A DNA stretch of 38,255 bases from NCBI RefSeq assembly GCF_001194135.2, contig NC_068996.1:32219461-32257715 (forward strand). The letters run 5' to 3'. Made by a program: the position numbers and the translations under genes. The notes under the pieces were generated by a model. It made no database searches and was not told the DNA's origin. It saw only the letters and a program-made list of their open reading frames with translations. The DNA is from Octopus bimaculoides (Eukaryota). The number at the start of each line of letters is the position of its first letter. The first letter of the stretch is position 1. Shown in pieces: positions 10,641 to 34,153 of the stretch.

Positions 10641-11005
10641 NNNNNNNNNNNNNNNNNNNNNNNNNNNNNNNNNNNNNNNNNNNNNNNNNNNNNNNNNNNN
10701 NNNNNNNNNNNNNNNNNNNNNNNNNNNNNNNNNNNNNNNNNNNNNNNNNNNNNNNNNNNNNNNNNNNNNNNNNNNNNNNNNNNNNNNNNNNNNNNNNNNN
10801 NNNNNNNNNNNNNNNNNNNNNNNNNNNNNNNNNNNNNNNNNNNNNNNNNNNNNNNNNNNNNNNNNNNNNNNNNNNNNNNNNNNNNNNNNNNNNNNNNNNN
10901 NNNNNNNNNNNNNNNNNNNNNNNNNNNNNNNNNNNNNNNNNNNNNNNNNNNNNNNNNNNNNNNNNNNNNNNNNNNNNNNNNNNNNNNNNNNNNNNNNNNN
11001 NNNNN

Positions 11006-16810: not shown

Positions 16811-16820
16811 NNNNNNNNNN

Positions 16821-20140: not shown

Positions 20141-20349
20141 GAAGGTGCCGAACTAGCAGAATCGTCAGCACGCCGAGCGAAATACATTTCGTCCGTCTCC
20201 TCGTTCTAAGTTGAAACTCCGCTGGGGTCAGTTTTGCCTTTGATCATTTCAGGGTCGATAAAATAAGTACCAGTTGAGTACTGGAAACAATCAAATCGAC
20301 GTATCCCTCCTCCGAAATTGCTAGTTTGGTGCCAAAATTTGAAACCATT
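20141..20349 (+). mobile_element. tRNA-derived octopus SINE (family 2)
   Basis: GAACTAGCAGAATCGTCAGCACGCCGAGCGAAAT...GGGTCGATAAAATAAGTACCAGTTGAGTACTGG...CCAAAATTTGAAACCA; collinear with the copy at 22737-22943. Confidence 0.82.
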
Positions 20350-22175: not shown

Positions 22176-22736
22176 ACTGGAAATAGTTTCGAAAAAGAAA
22201 CTGACAACGAGATTTTGTCAAAACCTAATTGGAATTAAATAGCATGAGTTGCACATTTAAACCCTATGTGAATAGATATGACATACATCATTATAGCTTA
22301 CAGTTTAATAAATAAAAAAAAGAAAGAAAACACATTGTCATTCTCAGCATCGTAACCATAATGAACTATCATCATCATCATCTTAATAACAAATTTGGCG
22401 TCAACAAAACTAAATGGTATAATACGATATTGGAACTATGTAAATGGAAGAAAAAGTAAATAAAAGAATGCTGAAAAATATTCATCTAAATGTTTATTTA
22501 CATTTTGAATTTGGAAATTAAAAATATATTTATCTTACATTGCAAGTAAAATATTTTCTGTGTGACAAAAATATAATCAGAGAAGAAGGGGAAAATATAG
22601 ATTGAGAGAGAGAGAGAGACAAAGACAGAGATAGCGAAGTAAAACGGAAGGGATACCATACCCAACAAATTCCAAATTTAACAAAAGACACAGACAAGAA
22701 TATAGAGAAATAAATTGCTTAAGACTACTGCATAGT

Positions 22737-22943
22737 AACTGGCGGAAGAGTTACCATGCTGGGCAAAATGATTTGCGGCATTTTGCTTGTTTTTACGTTC
22801 TGAGTGCAAATTCTGCAGGGTCGAATTTGCCTTTCATCCTTTAGGGGTCGATAAAATATGTACCAGTGGAGCATTGGGGTCGATGCAATCGACTTACCCA
22901 TCTCCGGCAGACTTGCTGGCCTTGTGCTAAAATTTGAAACCAG
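22737..22943 (+). mobile_element. tRNA-derived octopus SINE (family 2), abutting the truncated 3' end of the R4 relic
   Basis: TTACGTTCTGAGTGCAAATTC..GTCGAATTTGCCTTTCATCCTTTAGGGGTCGATAAAAT..TACCAGT..GGGGTCGATGCAATCGACTT..AAAATTTGAAACCA; collinear with 20141-20349. Confidence 0.82.
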
Positions 22944-22944
22944 T

Positions 22945-23630
22945 ATCTTTATCTTGTCATTCTCGATTATTCCTTCTAAGGTTTACCCGTACCACATCCT
23001 TGCTCTATCCAATTCATACATGCCACTCAGTTCTCAATGAATCATTCTTACGACATTACCACGTCTTCTTTTGTATTTGTGGGAGCCGCATTTAGAGTCA
23101 GAATCGTTTTGAAGAACGTGAGCCTGGTAGTTTTTGTAATCAAGTTTTGATCTTGTGCTGCCAATATGAAACCTTCAGTCTCTGCTTTCAGTCCTGAATT
23201 TCTCAGCCACTAATGGGTTGTTGCTTGATTTACATCAGCATTTCGATTTCGAAGTACATACTATCCATGCAGAGGCTTTTGGCATCACCGCTCCTCAATT
23301 TGTTTCTGCCCGTTCTTTTTTGAAGTCTGCTTGATCCATTTTGCATGTTTTGTGGTAGTAGTTTCAGGTTTTTCAAATAGTTCAGGATTAATGCCAAGTT
23401 CCCTTGCGAATTTGCAAGCTTCTTTGATAATATAAGGTGATTTTGTTTTGCTGCATTCATGTTTGCACACAAGTTGCAGCGTCCAGTTCTCTGTACTATA
23501 TAAGTACCTATTCATTGCGATCGTGGAGGTCTTACAGCACAGATCTACCTGCGCCATTCCTCTTTTTCCTTTACTTCTAGGTAGGTACAGACAATCAACA
23601 TATGCTTTTGAGTGGTGTATGTAGATTCAG
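22945..23630 (-). mobile_element. R4-clade (RLE-type) LINE, 3' segment (post-RT region to just before the endonuclease core)
   Basis: HHSKAYVDCLYLPRSKGKRGM, CKTSTIAMNRYL..ENWTLQLV, WLRNSGLKAETEGFILAAQDQNL, YKRRRGNVVRMIH*EL and WYG*TLEGIIENDKIKIL. Confidence 0.85.
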
Positions 23631-25420
23631 AATATTTTCTGAGAATATGAACTTGCAAGTCTTTTTCAAAATTGTAGCCGTTTGACGTGAAATGTTCAGC
23701 AAGTTTGGTCGAACTAACGCTATTGTGCCTGACGTCATACCTGTGTCCATTGAATCTTTTATTTAATTGTTTTATTGTACAATCAACATAAATCAAATTA
23801 TGTGTGATGCATTCTGCCGCGTACACCAAATGGGAATCTTTGTATGTTCCACCTTCCGTACAAATCATAACATTCCTATTATGATTCCTGATGGAATTGA
23901 TTTGACTCATGTTGTTGCACAGTGATCAGGATTTACCTCTCTTGCGGCTATTCTCTTATATTTTGATTCAATCTAAAGGCTACAATAGGCGGCTGAGGGA
24001 ATATTTGTATGAAGCGGGGATATTTTTCTGAAATATGCTAGTAATTTTTATGTAACACTTTTGAAAAGCCAGCGAAATTCTGGTGCCAGCTAATCACTAA
24101 AGAAAATCTATCACAAATTTTACTTTGGTTGTTAAAATTATGCGTGGAAGTTTGACTATCTTTGCTAATTTTAGCATTGTCATTGCGATTCCCTTTACTC
24201 ATGATTCACTATAACCGAGTTTGACATAATGGTCTACAAAAGCATTTGCATGTTTCTAGTAATCCCCTATATCAATATAAATCCATTTTATCCACAAAAA
24301 TTGGGATTTCGGATTTGACTTAAATTATATGATGCGGATAATCAGAGCAGCGATGAAGGTAAATGTCGGATGACGTGGCCTTGCCAAATAACTCTGTCAC
24401 TGTTTTGCATCCAGAACACTTAACTTTTGTGACCAAAAACTGGAAGACAGTGTTTTTAAAACTAGACGTACATTTTATATTAGACTTAAAAACCATAGTT
24501 TTTAACGTAACAGTCACAGAAATGCAAGAAGTCAATTAAAACTGTCCTGTGATCTTTCCCGGACAAGAAGAACAGTCATCAATGAACTGTAACCAGAGTA
24601 TCGGTTCATGACCACGCAAGGATTTGAATGTATTTATTAACTGTATCGCGAATTTCCTCATGAAGACATTAGCAAAAATAACTGCCATGAGGGTTACCAT
24701 GGCGCAAAATCTTCAATAACTTACAGGGAAAATTAAATGGAATACTTTTGTTTGACCGTTTTTCTAAGACAGTCATGCATGCTTCCACTCCCTCATCGTG
24801 TCAATATTGGAGTATAGTGAATAAAACATCCATGGTTACCAAAATAACCCCCAGTTTTCCATACTACTTCGGTGCTTGGAAAAGTTGTTAAAATCGAAGG
24901 TATCCTGAATATAGGAGCTTGATCTTGCAACAAGGAGTAGAAAGCTATCCAACCACTTCGAAATTTGAGCTGGGAACATGTAAATGTTCTTATACACCAT
25001 ATCTGCTGCAAATTGAGTGCATTAGAAGAAATCTTTCGAACTTTTTGTGTATTTTGGGGAGACCATAAAATACAGGTTTTCTTTGTTCTGACTCTGTAAA
25101 CTCTTGGATTAATGAAACTGTTTACCTCCATTTCCAGAATTATTTAGTCAAGTTCCTCTCTGTAATTCGGGTTTGGATCGACAGATAATTCTTCATGTGA
25201 AGTTTTGTCTCTTAAAACTTCTTCATAAGCCGAAATATACTCACTGGTGTCTATAATTACAATAGCGCCTTGCTTACCCGCTATTTTAATAACAATAGAG
25301 TCATTATTAGCTACACGACGGAGTGCGTAACGCTGGGAATTTGTGAGATTATTCCAGGACTTCTTTCTATTTGTTTTAAAGCTTTCCCTAATGCCTGTCT
25401 GGCAAGATTCAGGAAATTCT
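23630..25420 (-). mobile_element. Penelope-like element RT plus GIY-YIG segment, truncated at both ends, lying inside the R4 relic
   Basis: NNLTNSQRYAL..SIVIKIAGKQGAIVII, FYGLPKIHK, KWLDSFL..SYIQDT, LVTMDV, AM..MAVIFANVFM, WLQFIDD (24575-24586), LHRCSDYPHH, PQPPIVAFR and LVYAAEC..LIYV..RFNGHR..TKLAEHF..DLQVHIL. Confidence 0.9.
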
Positions 25421-26850
25421 ACTAGTACTTGTTATAAGTCGCAGATAAACAGATAATGGACTTATAGGTTTTTGGAACTTTGGATTCATTATTCATTGGG
25501 AGTAGGTAAGTAATACCACTTGCTAACCAGTCAAGTGATTTCTAAGGATCTCTCATAACTTCATTGGCCAGCTAGACTAACTTTTCCTGTGTGCACTGGA
25601 ACGATGAGAGCTAGAAATTTGGCACCCTGTCTACTTATGAACCTCCATGAGGGTCTTCCTTAGGTCTGCTATTGTAACGTCTTCCCATGCTTGTTCTTGT
25701 AATCTTTGGTAGGATCCTTCTCTGCATCTAATCCAATTTGCAGTTTCATTGTATGACTTCTCATCACTCCAAATCTTCTTCCAAACGTTTCCAACTTCTT
25801 CCTTGGGAGCTTATTTTCTCTGTAGAATATTTTCTCATTGGATGTGAGCAGCTTATTTTGCTTGTAAAATTTGTTTCTTTTCTCATAACGTCGTGTTTTT
25901 TGAAGTTTTCCTTCAACATTTTGCTCCAGCATTTCTTTTGTTCATATCAGTTCTTCTCTTGGTGAGAATCTATATTTTCTCTTCATCTCCCTACCTTTTC
26001 TGGATCTTACATCTTTTCCTCAGATTAATTCCTTTAATATTGATATTTCTCCTCTCATTATTTCAATCTGTTTTCAATTCTATTTTTCCAGTTTGGATTT
26101 CTTCTGAGGATTTTTTTCTCATTCTTCATTTAACTTAATATGGTCAGATTTTAATTCTTGTATGATTTCTTTTGTTACATAATTTATTTTTATTTTGGTT
26201 TACATGTGAGAGTTTATAGAGGGATTCTCTATCGTTCATATTTGTATGAAGTTCATTCAGCAAGTTCATTCAGAATTTTCTGCTTCATGCCCATCATAGA
26301 CTCTCTGTGTTCTTCAGCAAATGTATGGCCTTCAAATACTTTATTTACCACTTTTCTGGTTATCGTTATCAAGTTCATTAGAATTTAGTCAGTTGATAGT
26401 CTTTCAATTAAGACTCATGGCATTTTCTCTCCTAATCTGATTCTTCATTTCCTTCCTGTCTTATATTTAGGTCTTTTCTGCTGCGTGCTTGGTCAAGATT
26501 ATTTCTGAAGATATCCCTCATAACATTTACTAACTTATTTTCAGCTAAGTATGGTCTGCTACCTTGATTTCATGTTCTCCATATTTCATGATTTTGTGGT
26601 GTGTCTCTCTAGGGATGGTCTCCTTAATGCATAGTAATAAGTGTATATTACTTCTTTACGTTATTTTTCTTTTTTTGTGGTGCCTGAGGTGGTGAACTTT
26701 GAGGACTTGAGATTGGGAAGTTACCGTTTAGTGGTCATCCAAGTTCGTTTTGGAGAAGAGTTTGTGTCAGAAGATGACTTTTCAACTTCAGGTTGGCTCT
26801 TTGCTAAGAGACGCACTTCAAGATTAACTATAGGACAAACGATTTGGTGT
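25420..26850 (-). mobile_element. R4-clade LINE, 5' segment (N-terminal domain to start of RT)
   Basis: EVIYTYYYAL, NKLVNVMRDIF, RRYEKRNKFYKQNKL, QEQAWEDVTIADLRK, DRVPNF*LSSF and DWLASGITYLLP..YKSIICLSATY, which ends at the junction with the PLE. Confidence 0.85.
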
Positions 26851-27861
26851 ATTATTTTAATTTTCCTTTGTGTGTAATAAAACATTTATGCAGCATTAAT
26901 ATTATTATTATTGAGCCCTGTATGGCTAATGAAGAAACGATTATTATTATCTCTACCATTATCATTACCACCATTATTATTACCATTATTTTTATTGCCG
27001 TTACATTTACTATTTTTATGCTACTTTAGTAGTTGTGGCTATTGCTGATCCCCATTATTATTGTCATTATTTTTGTCCTTGTGGCTACATTCTGTAGCCA
27101 TGGTAATGGTATAGTTATCATAGTTGTTATTGTTGTTACTTTCTGAGTTGTTGCTGATGTTACTGGGAATTGGCGAAGTTAATTTTGCTGGTTTTATCCT
27201 ACAACTTTTGCCTTGTGTTTGAGACAGTCATAAGTACATAAGATTTGGGGAAGAGACACAGTTTGGCGGACATACAGTTAGATATCATTAGTCTAAACAG
27301 ATTCTATAGATGTTGAACGGGAAGTGAAAAAAGAGTGGTTGCACCCACATGGTCAGCAAAATGTGTTTACAACTGATTAATGAAAGTAGTGGGAGATTTT
27401 GAAGGAAACTGATTTACTTTGTTCTGTTTCAATTGCCGATAGAAAAAAAAATATATACATCCATGATTTTTTTACAATATTAAATGAAGTTTGCTGCGCT
27501 TTACAGTTTTTGTAATTGTGCAATATGTAAATATGTTAATCGCTATCTTTTGTGTTTGTTATTAGTTCTGAAACTGTTCTGAGTTTTAAGTTTTGGAGGC
27601 GTTTCAATTTTTCCTGGCTATAAAAGCAGAATGTTTGCGTGTTCTAGATGCTAGAAAAAGAAAGATTTTTTTTAAAAATTACTCAGTGTCACTTAATTTT
27701 GAAGTTACTCTAGTTAGATAGCCAGAGGCATCTAAGAATGTTCTTGCTATAAAAGACATGTTTACGTATTCGAATAGTGAAAATGAATAAAATAAATTTG
27801 GAATAGTCACAGAAAATTGTAGACATTCAAATTTTTAAAGTTATATAAAGGATGATTGCTT

Positions 27862-31932: not shown

Positions 31933-32830
31933 ACCAATCTATCTGTTTCTTTCTCTCTCTTACAAACACACACACACACACACACNNNNNNNNNNNNNNN
32001 NNNNNNNNNNNNNNNNNNNNNNNNNNNNNNNNNNNNNNNNNNNNNNNNNNNNNNNNNNNNNNNNNNNNNNNNNNNNNNNNNNNNNNNNNNNNNNNNNNNN
32101 NNNNNNNNNNNNNNNNNNNNNNNNNNNNNNNNNNNNNNNNNNNNNNNNNNNNNNNNNNNNNNNNNNNNNNNNNNNNNNNNNNNNNNNNNNNNNNNNNNNN
32201 NNNNNNNNNNNNNNNNNNNNNNNNNNNNNNNNNNNNNNNNNNNNNNNNNNNNNNNNNNNNNNNNNNNNNNNNNNNNNNNNNNNNNNNNNNNNNNNNNNNN
32301 NNNNNNNNNNNNNNNNNNNNNNNNNNNNNNNNNNNNNNNNNNNNNNNNNNNNNNNNNNNNNNNNNNNNNNNNNNNNNNNNNNNNNNNNNNNNNNNNNNNN
32401 NNNNNNNNNNNNNNNNNNNNNNNNNNNNNNNNNNNNNNNNNNNNNNNNNNNNNNNNNNNNNNNNNNNNNNNNNNNNNNNNNNNNNNNNNNNNNNNNNNNN
32501 NNNNNNNNNNNNNNNNNNNNNNNNNNNNNNNNNNNNNNNNATATATATATATATATATATATATATAAGCAATGCCTACATATCTATGGTACTTTATTTA
32601 TTAGTGAGTCGTATGTGTTATGTCTGTTTCCTTACATATTTCATATCCCTTCATGTACGGTGCATTTGCGCATACGATTATATACTTATTGAAATAAGTA
32701 GAGACACTAACAAAAATCACACTCAAAAATGTATTTGTAAATGTATACATTTTAATTGTAAATGTACACGGGTTTGTGTATTTTCGTATAAGTATATATG
32801 TATATATGCGCAATTATACATACAAATAAA

Positions 32831-32868
<38 letters not shown>

Positions 32869-33732
32869 CATACATACATACATACATACATACACACACA
32901 TACATACATACATACATACATACAGACAGACAGACAGACATATGTATGCGTAAGTCTTTTGATCAATTGATGTGAATCAAAACAACACAGTAGCTTCGTT
33001 GTGATTCAATAAAACATAAAACGATCCATCCCTCCATCCATCCCTCCATCCATCCATCCATACATACATACATGCATACATACATACATACATGCATACG
33101 TTCATACATACATACATATATATACATACGTATTTATGTGTATATATCATTTATATATTGTTCACGTCAAAGGCATTTTTAAAACCAATATTTACACGCT
33201 ATTATTTATAGCCTATCTGCATCAATGTCCAACATTTCAAAACGATTTTTTTATGTACACACATATGCACAGAGACCCAGACGCAAACATACACACACAT
33301 ATATGTGTGTGTGTGTATATANNNNNNNNNNNNNNNNNNNNNNNNNNNNNNNNNNNNNNNNNNNNNNNNNNNNNNNNNNNNNNNNNNNNNNNNNNNNNNN
33401 NNNNNNNNNNNNNNNNNNNNNNNNNNNNNNNNNNNNNNNNNNNNNNNNNNNNNNNNNNNNNNNNNNNNNNNNNNNNNNNNNNNNNNNNNNNNNNNNNNNN
33501 NNNNNNNNNNNNNNNNNNNNNNNNNNNNNNNNNNNNNNNNNNNNNNNNNNNNNNNNNNNNNNNNNNNNNNNNNNNNNNNNNNNNNNNNNNNNNNNNNNNN
33601 NNNNNNNNNNNNNNNNNNNNNNNNNNNNNNNNNNNNNNNNNNNNNNNNNNNNNNNNNNNNNNNNNNNNNNNNNNNNNNNNNNNNNNNNNNNNNNNNNNNN
33701 NNNNNNNNNNNNNNNNNNNNNNNNNNNNNNNN
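31880..33732. other. Two assembly gaps (N 31986-32540 and 33322-33732) among (CT)n, (CA)n, (AT)n, (ACAT)n and (ATCC)n repeats
   Basis: Directly visible. Confidence 0.97.
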
Positions 33733-34038: not shown

Positions 34039-34066
34039 AATAATAATAATAATAATAATAATAATG

Positions 34067-34153
<87 letters not shown>

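What the first reader, a model, noticed from the sequence alone, without database searches (positions are those of the whole stretch)
22945..26850. R4-clade LINE whose RT core is replaced by a co-oriented Penelope RT plus GIY-YIG module
Seen in sequence (minus strand, 5' to 3'): the R4 N-terminal region runs to the YKSIICLSATY motif (NYRPITCL equivalent, junction about 25420). About 1.8 kb of PLE follows, from the pre-RT NLT..AL motif through FIDD to a GIY-YIG cut off at DLQVHIL (junction about 23630). R4 then resumes at HHSKAYVDCLYLPR. Established: in R4-type LINEs the RT palm and fingers (roughly 1 kb, including the YxDD motif) lie between those two R4 motifs, and they are absent here. A simple insertion would leave the host complete, and the PLE is truncated at both ends. 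Inference: this is either a one-off PLE insertion with target deletion or a template switch, or a copy of a chimeric family in which an RLE-type LINE swapped its RT and gained a second nuclease. The frames are too decayed to prove in-frame fusion (TAG TAG and a frameshift at the 5' junction).
Basis: partly seen in the sequence, partly recalled or inferred. Interest (0 to 1): 0.78.

Follow-up and report, generated by a model that had tools for sequence, protein, structure and literature searches.

The report
Dead one-off LINE/Penelope composite locus
A decayed fragment of a Penelope-like retrotransposon sits where the reverse-transcriptase core of an old Dong/R4-type LINE copy used to be, but it appears as a single, out-of-frame, non-functional locus of this octopus genome, so it is ordinary transposon wreckage and not a new chimeric mobile element.

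Summary
On the minus strand an RLE-type (Dong/R4-like) LINE runs from about 26895 to 25433. A 1,810-bp Penelope-like (PLE) RT plus GIY-YIG fragment follows (25432-23623). The LINE then resumes at 23622 and runs to 22947. About 317 aa (about 950 bp) of LINE RT core are missing.

The chimeric-family reading is not supported.
- Both junctions were mapped to the base, and each is out of frame as formed.
- The LINE also lacks its CCHC knuckle and its RLE core.
- All three parts are full of stops: 10, 15 and 5.
- In the contigs of eight DNA runs of this species, hundreds of related LINE and PLE contigs all diverge exactly at the junctions. This holds at 80-88% likeness.
- Only the locus's own contigs cross, at single-copy depth.
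- No other species in the run index, no RNA run and no database protein shares a junction.

Misassembly is unlikely. The 5' junction is in 13 runs from at least 9 samples, and the 3' junction is in one independent run.

Best explanation: a 5'-truncated PLE inserted into an old LINE copy, followed by a microhomology (ACA) deletion, or capture of a PLE fragment at a break. Low interest.

The parts
25433..26895 (-). 5' part of a decayed Dong/R4-like (RLE-type) LINE copy: the N-terminal region up to the start of the RT (..PKTYKSIICLSATY, equivalent to KNYRPITCLTTTY). It needs 10 stops and several frame changes to be read through.
   Evidence: P0053 aa 19-85 maps to 25634-25434. Translation and stop count. 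Multi-copy depth of 4-35x extends to about 26900. The 5' boundary is approximate.
25432..25433 (-). 5' junction, LINE|PLE. At most 1 nt is shared. The LINE frame runs into TAG TAG two codons later, so the junction is out of frame with the PLE.
   Evidence: Alignment to the O. sinensis PLE copy L003 starts at 25432. A 158/159-nt contig covering 25371/2-25529 has 0 mismatches and single-copy depth in X1, X2, X4 and X8. The junction words are in 13 runs.
23623..25432 (-). 1,810-bp fragment of an EN+ Penelope-like element: pre-RT region (WNNLT..AL), RT (FYGLPKIHK ... FIDD), linker, and the first two thirds of the C-terminal GIY-YIG domain. It lacks the N-terminus, the last 41 codons and the 3' UTR. 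It carries 15 stops and at least 4 frameshifts.
   Evidence: L003 continues upstream (NPNWFPDKVRDGRS) and downstream (ASLSLLRMHEEKYVCELLTSHPGGMNKMTGEYHQIYTKLFD*).
23620..23623 (-). 3' junction, PLE|LINE (23623|23622). ACA at 23622-23620 is present in both parents in some PLE subfamilies, giving 0-3 nt of microhomology. The PLE frame reads 25 junk codons and then a stop.
   Evidence: PLE contigs diverge at 23620-23623 and LINE contigs at 23622. Reconstruction. Crossing contig of 79 nt, 0 mismatches, depth 69.5 in X4.
22947..23622 (-). 3' part of the LINE: from the end of the RT thumb (IHHSKAYVDCLYLPRSKGKRGM) to KILWDF-equivalent. An internal 20-aa deletion near 23090 removes the CCHC zinc knuckle. 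The last 118 aa (PD-(D/E)XK RLE core) and the 3' UTR are absent.
   Evidence: tblastn of P0052 and P0053. P0053 aligns to R2 proteins through the RLE.
22740..22946 (+). Very high-copy SINE whose 3' end abuts the broken 3' end of the LINE. No LINE sequence resumes beyond it.
   Evidence: Depth about 45,000x single copy. Other copies at 20202-20347 in the window and in L003. Unique contigs at 22400-22848.
26900..27062 (.). Cluster of degenerate (AAT/TAA)n runs directly upstream of the LINE 5' end. It is probably the remnant of the microsatellite that the Dong-type LINE inserted into.
   Evidence: 4 of the window's 15 (TAA)>=3 runs lie here, and such runs cover 0.8% of the window. TRF array at 26943-26996. 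The homologous element L002 ends in (ATA/TAA)n after its 3' UTR.

Best explanation
This is a single, dead, composite locus produced by ordinary transposon nesting and deletion. It is not a mobile chimera.

Proposed sequence of events:
1. A Dong/R4-like LINE inserted, minus strand, into a (TAA)n microsatellite.
2. A Penelope-like element inserted into the start of its RT-coding region by target-primed reverse transcription and was 5'-truncated, as most PLE copies are. This made the 25433|25432 junction.
3. A deletion of about 1.2-2 kb, joined at an ACA microhomology, removed the PLE's last 41 codons and 3' UTR together with about 950 bp of LINE RT. This made the 23623|23622 junction.

A one-step variant fits equally well: a PLE cDNA fragment truncated at both ends was captured at a resected double-strand break inside the LINE.

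Further decay followed: a 20-aa deletion of the CCHC motif, loss of the LINE 3' end next to a SINE, and 30 stop codons. Nothing here encodes a working RT or nuclease.

What is shown: the element identities, the exact breakpoints, the frame mismatches, the missing catalytic parts, and the uniqueness and single-copy depth of the junctions. What is inferred: the order and type of the events.
For: Identity and missing parts.

Breakpoints to the base. In L003 the PLE continues on both sides. LINE copies of the same genome continue upstream of 23622 as VTRKLLTSKN, matching P0052 KTRKLLTSRN.

Frames. Codon-start positions modulo 3 are 2 (LINE-N), 0 (PLE) and 1 (LINE-C). There are no indels next to the junctions relative to the parents.

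Uniqueness.
- At 80% likeness, 363-431 contigs per run were laid around the 3' junction. Every long one stops at 23620-23625 or at 23622, except the locus's own X4 contig.
- At 88% likeness, only the locus's own contig covers 25431-25465.
- 5' junction contig depth against unique flanks: 14.7 versus 15-16 in X1 and 48 versus 46-51 in X2.
- In X4 both junction contigs have depth 69.4-69.5, against 63-68 for locus-specific neighbours.

Other searches.
- 5' junction words occur only in organism A, in 13 runs. 3' junction words occur only in X4.
- No RNA reads at 97% likeness or more in 3 RNA runs.
- No protein hit combines LINE and PLE domains.

The locus is deletion-prone: the CCHC deletion and the missing LINE 3' end, which target-primed insertion always includes.

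Both families are abundant in octopus genomes, with 5'-truncation gradients. Depth rises toward the 3' end in both; see also PMC8967140, PMC13282606 and PMC8557442.
Against: - The 3' junction was found in the cleaned contigs of only 1 of 13 runs. The thin sample of raw reads, 1-2% of three runs, had no crossing read. I attribute this to contig cleaning between very high-copy repeats, but a polymorphic junction is not excluded.
- Copies of a very old chimeric family that are less than 80% alike would escape the DNA test.
- Co-orientation of the three parts is required by a template-switch origin and has only a 50% chance under insertion.
- The order of events cannot be tested without the orthologous locus of a sister species.
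Confidence: 0.85

Rival explanations
1. Single-event template switching. During target-primed reverse transcription of the LINE RNA, the LINE RT jumped at the ACA microhomology onto a PLE RNA. It copied 1.8 kb and then jumped back onto LINE RNA about 950 nt further upstream. This would make a chimeric retrocopy in one step. It would still be a one-off.
For: All three parts are co-oriented. There is 0-3 nt of microhomology at the 3' junction and at most 1 nt at the 5' junction. RTs of R2-type LINEs are known to jump between templates (my own knowledge of R2 biochemistry, not tested here).
Against: It needs two jumps, the second returning to LINE RNA at an upstream position. It predicts an intact LINE 3' end at formation, so the locus would still need later deletions. 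It has no more explanatory power than insertion plus deletion.
Confidence: 0.08
2. Copy of a mobile chimeric family in which an RLE-type LINE replaced its RT with a PLE RT and gained a GIY-YIG nuclease.
For: Co-orientation, and the tidy replacement of one RT by another of similar size (1.8 kb in place of 0.95 kb).
Against: No second copy shares either junction at 80-88% likeness. The junctions are at single-copy depth. Both junctions are out of frame as formed. The GIY-YIG domain lacks its last 41 codons, and the PLE lacks its N-terminal region, which is conserved in relatives. No chimeric protein was found among 5.8 billion clusters. No transcripts were found.
Confidence: 0.03
3. Assembly artefact. 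Short-read assembly joined unrelated LINE and PLE copies through shared repeats.
For: The window comes from a scaffold with N gaps. The 3' junction lies between a LINE segment of about 100 copies and a PLE segment of about 1000-2000 copies. The junction contig is missing from 12 of 13 runs. No crossing raw read was seen in a thin sample.
Against: The 5' junction is in 13 runs from at least 9 samples and 4 studies, with 0 mismatches. A 79-nt contig in run X4, with 0 mismatches and depth 69.5, holds all 30 junction-spanning 31-mers of the 3' junction. Locus-specific contigs tile the PLE and both LINE parts.
Confidence: 0.04

Closest known systems
Nested transposable-element insertions with later deletion, including endonuclease-independent capture of truncated retroelement fragments at DNA breaks
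   Same: One element lies inside another. The inserted piece is truncated. Target sequence is lost, with 0-3 nt of microhomology at the joints. Decay is heavy and the locus is single.
   Different: Nothing essential. The only unusual point is that an RT core happens to be replaced by another RT in the same orientation.
Dong/R4 clade of RLE-bearing non-LTR retrotransposons (RepeatMasker LINE/Dong-R4), abundant in octopus genomes (PMC8967140, PMC13282606, PMC7998251)
   Same: The family homologs have RT, a CCHC knuckle and a C-terminal restriction-like endonuclease, and they align to R2 proteins over that whole span. They also show a (TAA)n flank.
   Different: This copy has lost the RT core, the CCHC motif and the RLE core. 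Placement inside R4, as opposed to another RLE clade, was not tested by phylogeny.
Canonical EN+ Penelope-like elements with a C-terminal GIY-YIG domain (PMC8557442)
   Same: RT with the PLE-specific flanking domains, a C-terminal GIY-YIG domain, 5' truncation, and copy number rising toward the 3' end.
   Different: It is 3'-truncated inside the GIY-YIG domain. There is no 3' UTR, no pseudo-LTR or tandem partner, and no hammerhead ribozyme at this locus.
Natural domain-shuffled retrotransposons, such as LINEs with two nucleases (Dualen: RLE plus APE) and the permuted-domain PLEs Naiad and Chlamys
   Different: Those are multi-copy families with intact ORFs. This is one out-of-frame, decayed locus. 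The mention of Dualen rests on my own knowledge. Naiad and Chlamys are described in PMC8557442.

Membership tests
Dong/R4-clade (RLE-type) LINE | Non-LTR-type reverse transcriptase domain | tested here: not met
   In this copy the RT core is deleted. It corresponds to P0053 aa 86-401, and the RVT_1 match is at aa 70-325. The family homolog P0053 has it (RVT_1, E 5.6e-30), so the copy is a remnant of such an element.
Dong/R4-clade (RLE-type) LINE | C-terminal CCHC motif plus PD-(D/E)XK restriction-like endonuclease | tested here: inconclusive
   Homolog P0053 aligns to R2 proteins 9nl3 and 9dou over aa 27-736, including the RLE (E 1e-30). In the window the CCHC motif is deleted and the copy ends before the RLE core. 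The flanking conserved blocks (WLRNSGLKAETEGFILAAQDQ, KYKRRRGNVV) are present.
Dong/R4-clade (RLE-type) LINE | Site-specific insertion into (TAA)n microsatellites (Dong type) or rDNA (R4 type), per PMC7998251 | tested here: met
   The 5' end abuts a cluster of (AAT)n runs at 26900-27062, and such runs cover only 0.8% of the window. The homologous element L002 is followed by (ATA/TAA)n after its 3' UTR. The 3' flank of the window copy is lost.
Dong/R4-clade (RLE-type) LINE | RT phylogeny placing it in R4/Dong and not in R2, NeSL, CRE or Hero | not tested
   No reference set of clade RTs was available, and the copy itself lacks the RT.
EN+ Penelope-like element | PLE-type RT with its flanking conserved regions | tested here: met
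   51 homologs, nearly all with PF28514 and PF26215 and most also with RVT_1; best E 1e-51 at 100% query cover. The FYGLPKIHK and FIDD motifs are readable. DNA identity to an O. sinensis PLE copy is 77-82%.
EN+ Penelope-like element | Complete C-terminal GIY-YIG nuclease | tested here: not met
   The N-terminal two thirds are present (VYAAEC..IYVDCT..RFNGHR; Pfam GIY-YIG positions 2-38 of 78, E 0.075). The last 41 codons (..RMHEE...PGGMN..) are absent.
EN+ Penelope-like element | Pseudo-LTR or tandem arrangement, and a hammerhead ribozyme | tested here: not met
   No repeat of the PLE in the window and no Rfam family at gathering score. This is expected for an internal fragment.
Mobile chimeric LINE-PLE family (hypothetical) | Several loci share both junctions | tested here: not met
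   all related contigs diverge at the junctions; junction words are found only in this species, at single-copy depth.
Mobile chimeric LINE-PLE family (hypothetical) | One ORF runs across the junctions, with intact catalytic domains | tested here: not met
   Frames are 2, 0 and 1. There are 30 stops. The GIY-YIG domain is truncated, and the CCHC motif and RLE core are missing.
Mobile chimeric LINE-PLE family (hypothetical) | Transcripts or proteins carry the fusion | tested here: not met
   No RNA run holds the junction words. No reads in 3 RNA-seq runs, about 6% of each sampled. No protein has both domain sets.

The most novel reading that the evidence does not exclude
The locus is either the last recognisable copy of a very old chimeric LINE-PLE lineage whose other copies are now less than 80% alike, or a fossil of an RT template switch between a Dong-type LINE RNP and a PLE RNA. 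The second reading would document cross-talk between two retrotransposon classes.
Probability: 0.06. Interest if true: 0.5.

Novelty: already known. Interest (0 to 1): 0.12.

Why it matters
It matters little biologically. Dong-R4 LINEs and Penelope-like elements are both abundant in octopus genomes, so nested and partly deleted composites are expected. The useful outcome is negative: an arrangement that looks like an RT module swap between retrotransposon classes is a one-off, out-of-frame wreck. It also shows that base-level breakpoint mapping against sibling copies, together with junction k-mer depth, can settle such cases quickly. Had it been a mobile family, it would have been a rare natural case of RT and nuclease module exchange between LINEs and PLEs.

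Tried and rejected
- Pfam on my stitched read-through translations gave almost nothing: only GIY-YIG at E 0.075. The identities therefore rest on homolog searches.
- A junction-spanning peptide search found one protein, O. sinensis LOC115222486. It matches only the PLE half. Its locus, L003, then served to map the breakpoints.
- Raw DNA reads (X19-X21) were sampled at 1-2% and gave 0-6 reads on the stretch, none crossing. That is too thin to say anything.
- RNA reads matched only the SINE.
- Rfam found no hammerhead ribozyme or any other family.
- I considered a double nesting: a second, 5'-truncated LINE inserted into the PLE. It is equally parsimonious in number of events. I ranked it lower because this LINE family appears to target (TAA)n (PMC7998251), and the sequence upstream of 23622 is PLE coding sequence, not a microsatellite.
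- I did not attempt relative dating of the three parts. The other-letter tables of read laying are biased by the likeness threshold.
Full report
WHAT IS THERE

I translated the minus strand of 27000-22700 in three frames and searched stitched read-through translations against the protein database.

The middle part has 51 homologs, best E 1e-51. Nearly all carry the domain set PF28514 plus PF26215, most also RVT_1, and about a quarter GIY-YIG. That is the architecture of canonical endonuclease-positive Penelope-like elements (PLEs; PMC8557442).

The two outer parts hit a different family, best E 2.8e-71. Its longest member, P0053 (765 aa), has RVT_1 at aa 70-325. It aligns over aa 27-736 to solved R2 retrotransposon proteins, from the RT through the C-terminal restriction-like endonuclease (9nl3 and 9dou, E about 1e-30).

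tblastn places the homologs as follows:
- P0053 aa 19-85 (...KNYRPITCLTTTYK) at 25634-25434.
- P0053 aa 402-647 (MHHPKADIDRLYLPRS...) at 23620-22941.
- The PLE homologs between 25431 and about 23590.

So P0053 aa 86-401, about 317 aa or 950 bp and essentially the whole RT core, is absent from this LINE copy. A co-oriented PLE fragment lies in its place.

CLASSIFYING THE LINE

The family is an RLE-type LINE. It has CCHC plus RHD..RPDI..D..K motifs in P0052 and P0053 and the R2 alignment.

R4/Dong elements carry RT plus an REL endonuclease and insert into rDNA or microsatellites. Dong elements of molluscs use (TAA)n (PMC7998251). Two findings fit that:
- The homologous element on contig L002 is followed, after about 190 nt of 3' UTR, by a perfect (ATA/TAA)n run.
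- In the window, the LINE's 5' end abuts a cluster of four (AAT)n runs at 26900-27062. Such runs cover only 0.8% of the window.

Dong-R4 and Penelope are both among the abundant, anciently expanded repeat classes of octopus genomes (PMC8967140, PMC13282606). I did not run an RT phylogeny, so Dong/R4 rests on architecture and target. The copy itself no longer has an RT.

EXACT BREAKPOINTS

Two independent sources agree.

Source 1, a related PLE copy. The copy is in the Octopus sinensis assembly (L003, reached through protein P0079).
- It aligns at 77.6% to window 25432-24705 and at 82% to 23914-23623. The alignments stop exactly at the two junctions.
- L003 continues upstream with PLE coding sequence (..NPNWFPDKVRDGRS|QALLEF..).
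- It continues downstream with 41 more codons (ASLSLLRMHEEKYVCELLTSHPGGMNKMTGEYHQIYTKLFD*) and a 3' UTR.

Source 2, contigs from DNA runs of the same species.
- PLE-derived contigs fit down to 23620-23623 and then continue with the same ..LKMHEE.. sequence.
- LINE-derived contigs fit up to 23622 and then continue with sequence that translates VTRKLLTSKN. This is the RT-thumb segment that precedes MHHPKAD in P0052 (KTRKLLTSRN).

The resulting breakpoints:
- The genome's own LINE family does contain the sequence that this copy lacks.
- The junctions are 25433|25432, with at most 1 nt shared, and 23623|23622, with 0-3 nt (ACA) shared depending on the PLE subfamily.
- The PLE piece is 1,810 bp.

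COULD IT BE A WORKING FUSION?

No.
- Frames. Codon-start positions modulo 3 are 2 for the LINE N-part, 0 for the PLE at both of its ends, and 1 for the LINE C-part.
- 5' junction. The LINE frame runs into TAG TAG two codons after the junction.
- 3' junction. The PLE frame reads 25 unrelated codons after the junction and then stops.
- Original state. The sequence on both sides of each junction aligns to the parental families without indels, so the frame mismatches date from the formation of the junctions.
- PLE losses. The PLE lacks its conserved N-terminal region. It also lacks the C-terminal third of the GIY-YIG domain, including the ..HEE.. and ..GGMN segment.
- LINE losses. The LINE has a 20-aa deletion that removes the CCHC knuckle, and it ends at KILWDF-equivalent. 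The last 118 aa (RLE core) and the 3' UTR are missing.
- Decay. Reading the three parts through needs 10, 15 and 5 stops (LINE N-part, PLE, LINE C-part) and several frame changes.

IS IT A FAMILY?

Contigs from eight DNA runs of the species were laid on the junction regions.

5' junction, at 88% likeness:
- A single 158/159-nt contig (25371/2-25529) with 0 mismatches covers 25431-25465 in each of X1, X2, X4 and X8.
- Its depth is 14.7, 48.1, 69.4 and 19.4. The unique flanks of the locus have 15-16 in X1, 46-51 in X2 and 36-45 in X8.
- No other contig crosses.

3' junction, at 80% likeness:
- 363-431 contigs per run were laid.
- All the long ones end at 23620-23625 (PLE side) or at 23622 (LINE side).
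- The one exception is a 79-nt contig of X4 with 0 mismatches and depth 69.5, the same depth as neighbouring locus-specific contigs (63-69).

An index search with the pure junction 60-mers gave:
- The 5' junction in 13 runs of organism A, from at least 9 samples and 4 studies. No other species and no RNA run holds it.
- The 3' junction only in X4.

Three RNA-seq runs, about 6% of each sampled, gave no read at 97% likeness or more anywhere in the composite. Only SINE reads were found. None of the 79 proteins found combines LINE and PLE domains.

Related LINE segments occur at tens to about 130 copies. PLE segments occur at 20 to about 2,000 copies. Depth rises toward the 3' end in both, which is the signature of 5'-truncated target-primed insertions (PMC8557442). 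A mobile chimera of comparable age should therefore have left further junction-bearing copies. None is seen.

IS IT AN ASSEMBLY ARTEFACT?

This is unlikely.
- The 5' junction is supported in every DNA run examined.
- The 3' junction is supported by one independent run, whose contig contains all 30 junction-spanning 31-mers.

The 3' junction's absence from the other runs' contigs is best explained by contig cleaning. It is a 60-nt single-copy link between a LINE node of about 100 copies and a PLE node of 1,000-2,000 copies. The tool notes that contigs show presence, not absence. The four runs of sample S1 also lack it.

The raw-read sample was too thin to help: 0-6 reads on the stretch, none crossing. 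This is the weakest point of the analysis, and a polymorphic 3' junction is not excluded.

HOW IT AROSE (INFERENCE)

Target-primed insertions always carry the element's 3' end. The PLE's missing 3' end and the LINE's missing 3' end therefore both require deletion or break repair.

The most economical history is:
1. A Dong-type LINE inserts into (TAA)n.
2. A 5'-truncated PLE inserts right after the ..TTY codon, giving the 5' junction.
3. One deletion of about 1.2-2 kb, joined at ACA, removes the PLE 3' end and 950 bp of LINE RT, giving the 3' junction.

A one-step capture of a doubly truncated PLE cDNA at a resected break fits equally well.

Two alternatives rank lower:
- A double nesting, with a second 5'-truncated LINE inserted into the PLE, needs as many events. 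It is disfavoured because this LINE family seems to target (TAA)n, and the upstream flank of 23622 is PLE coding sequence.
- A two-jump template switch by the LINE RT is possible but needs more special assumptions.

All of these make a one-off.

VERDICT

The interesting interpretation is not supported. This is ordinary nested and deleted transposon debris, at a single locus apparently fixed in the species, and of low interest.

Noticed in passing
window 23623-23654: A 32-nt stretch at the 3' end of the PLE fragment (GIY-YIG region..VHILRKYSES) has about 1,000-2,000 times single-copy depth. Neighbouring PLE sequence has 20-300 times. It may be a core shared by many PLE families, or it may reflect extreme 5' truncation.
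   Followed up: partly
window 22740-22946 (+): A SINE at about 45,000 times single-copy depth, with RNA reads of the family present. In other copies the sequence after its 3' end is (ATT/TAA)-rich. That is the kind of microsatellite Dong-type LINEs target, which hints at a SINE-Dong partnership.
   Followed up: no
window 22936 joined to 26895: Contigs in X2, X3 and X8 at about 1-2x depth join the SINE end to the (ATT)n at the LINE's 5' boundary, with CAAGTT between them and only 21 nt on the short side. This is probably another SINE copy next to a microsatellite. Formally it could be an allele that lacks the whole composite.
   Followed up: no
window 25372-25529, run X8: The 5' junction contig has depth 19.4 in X8, while the unique flanks of the same run have 36-45. 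This may be heterozygosity at the locus in that individual.
   Followed up: no
window about 9960-9700 (-): A peptide resembling a GIY-YIG core (KNYIGLCEGDFKSRYADHLSSFR) appears in a decayed frame. It has no Pfam hit.
   Followed up: partly
window 34848-34732 (-) and 34039-34152: A weak zf-RVT-like remnant (..CEQSDETVLHAFVQCP.., Pfam E 0.01) lies about 580 nt upstream, on the minus strand, of a long (AAT)n array. It may be another LINE 3' remnant abutting a (TAA)n target.
   Followed up: partly
window 10641-11005, 16811-16820, 31986-32540, 33322-33732: Four runs of N. The window comes from a gapped scaffold, so repeat-rich joins in it deserve read-level checks.
   Followed up: yes
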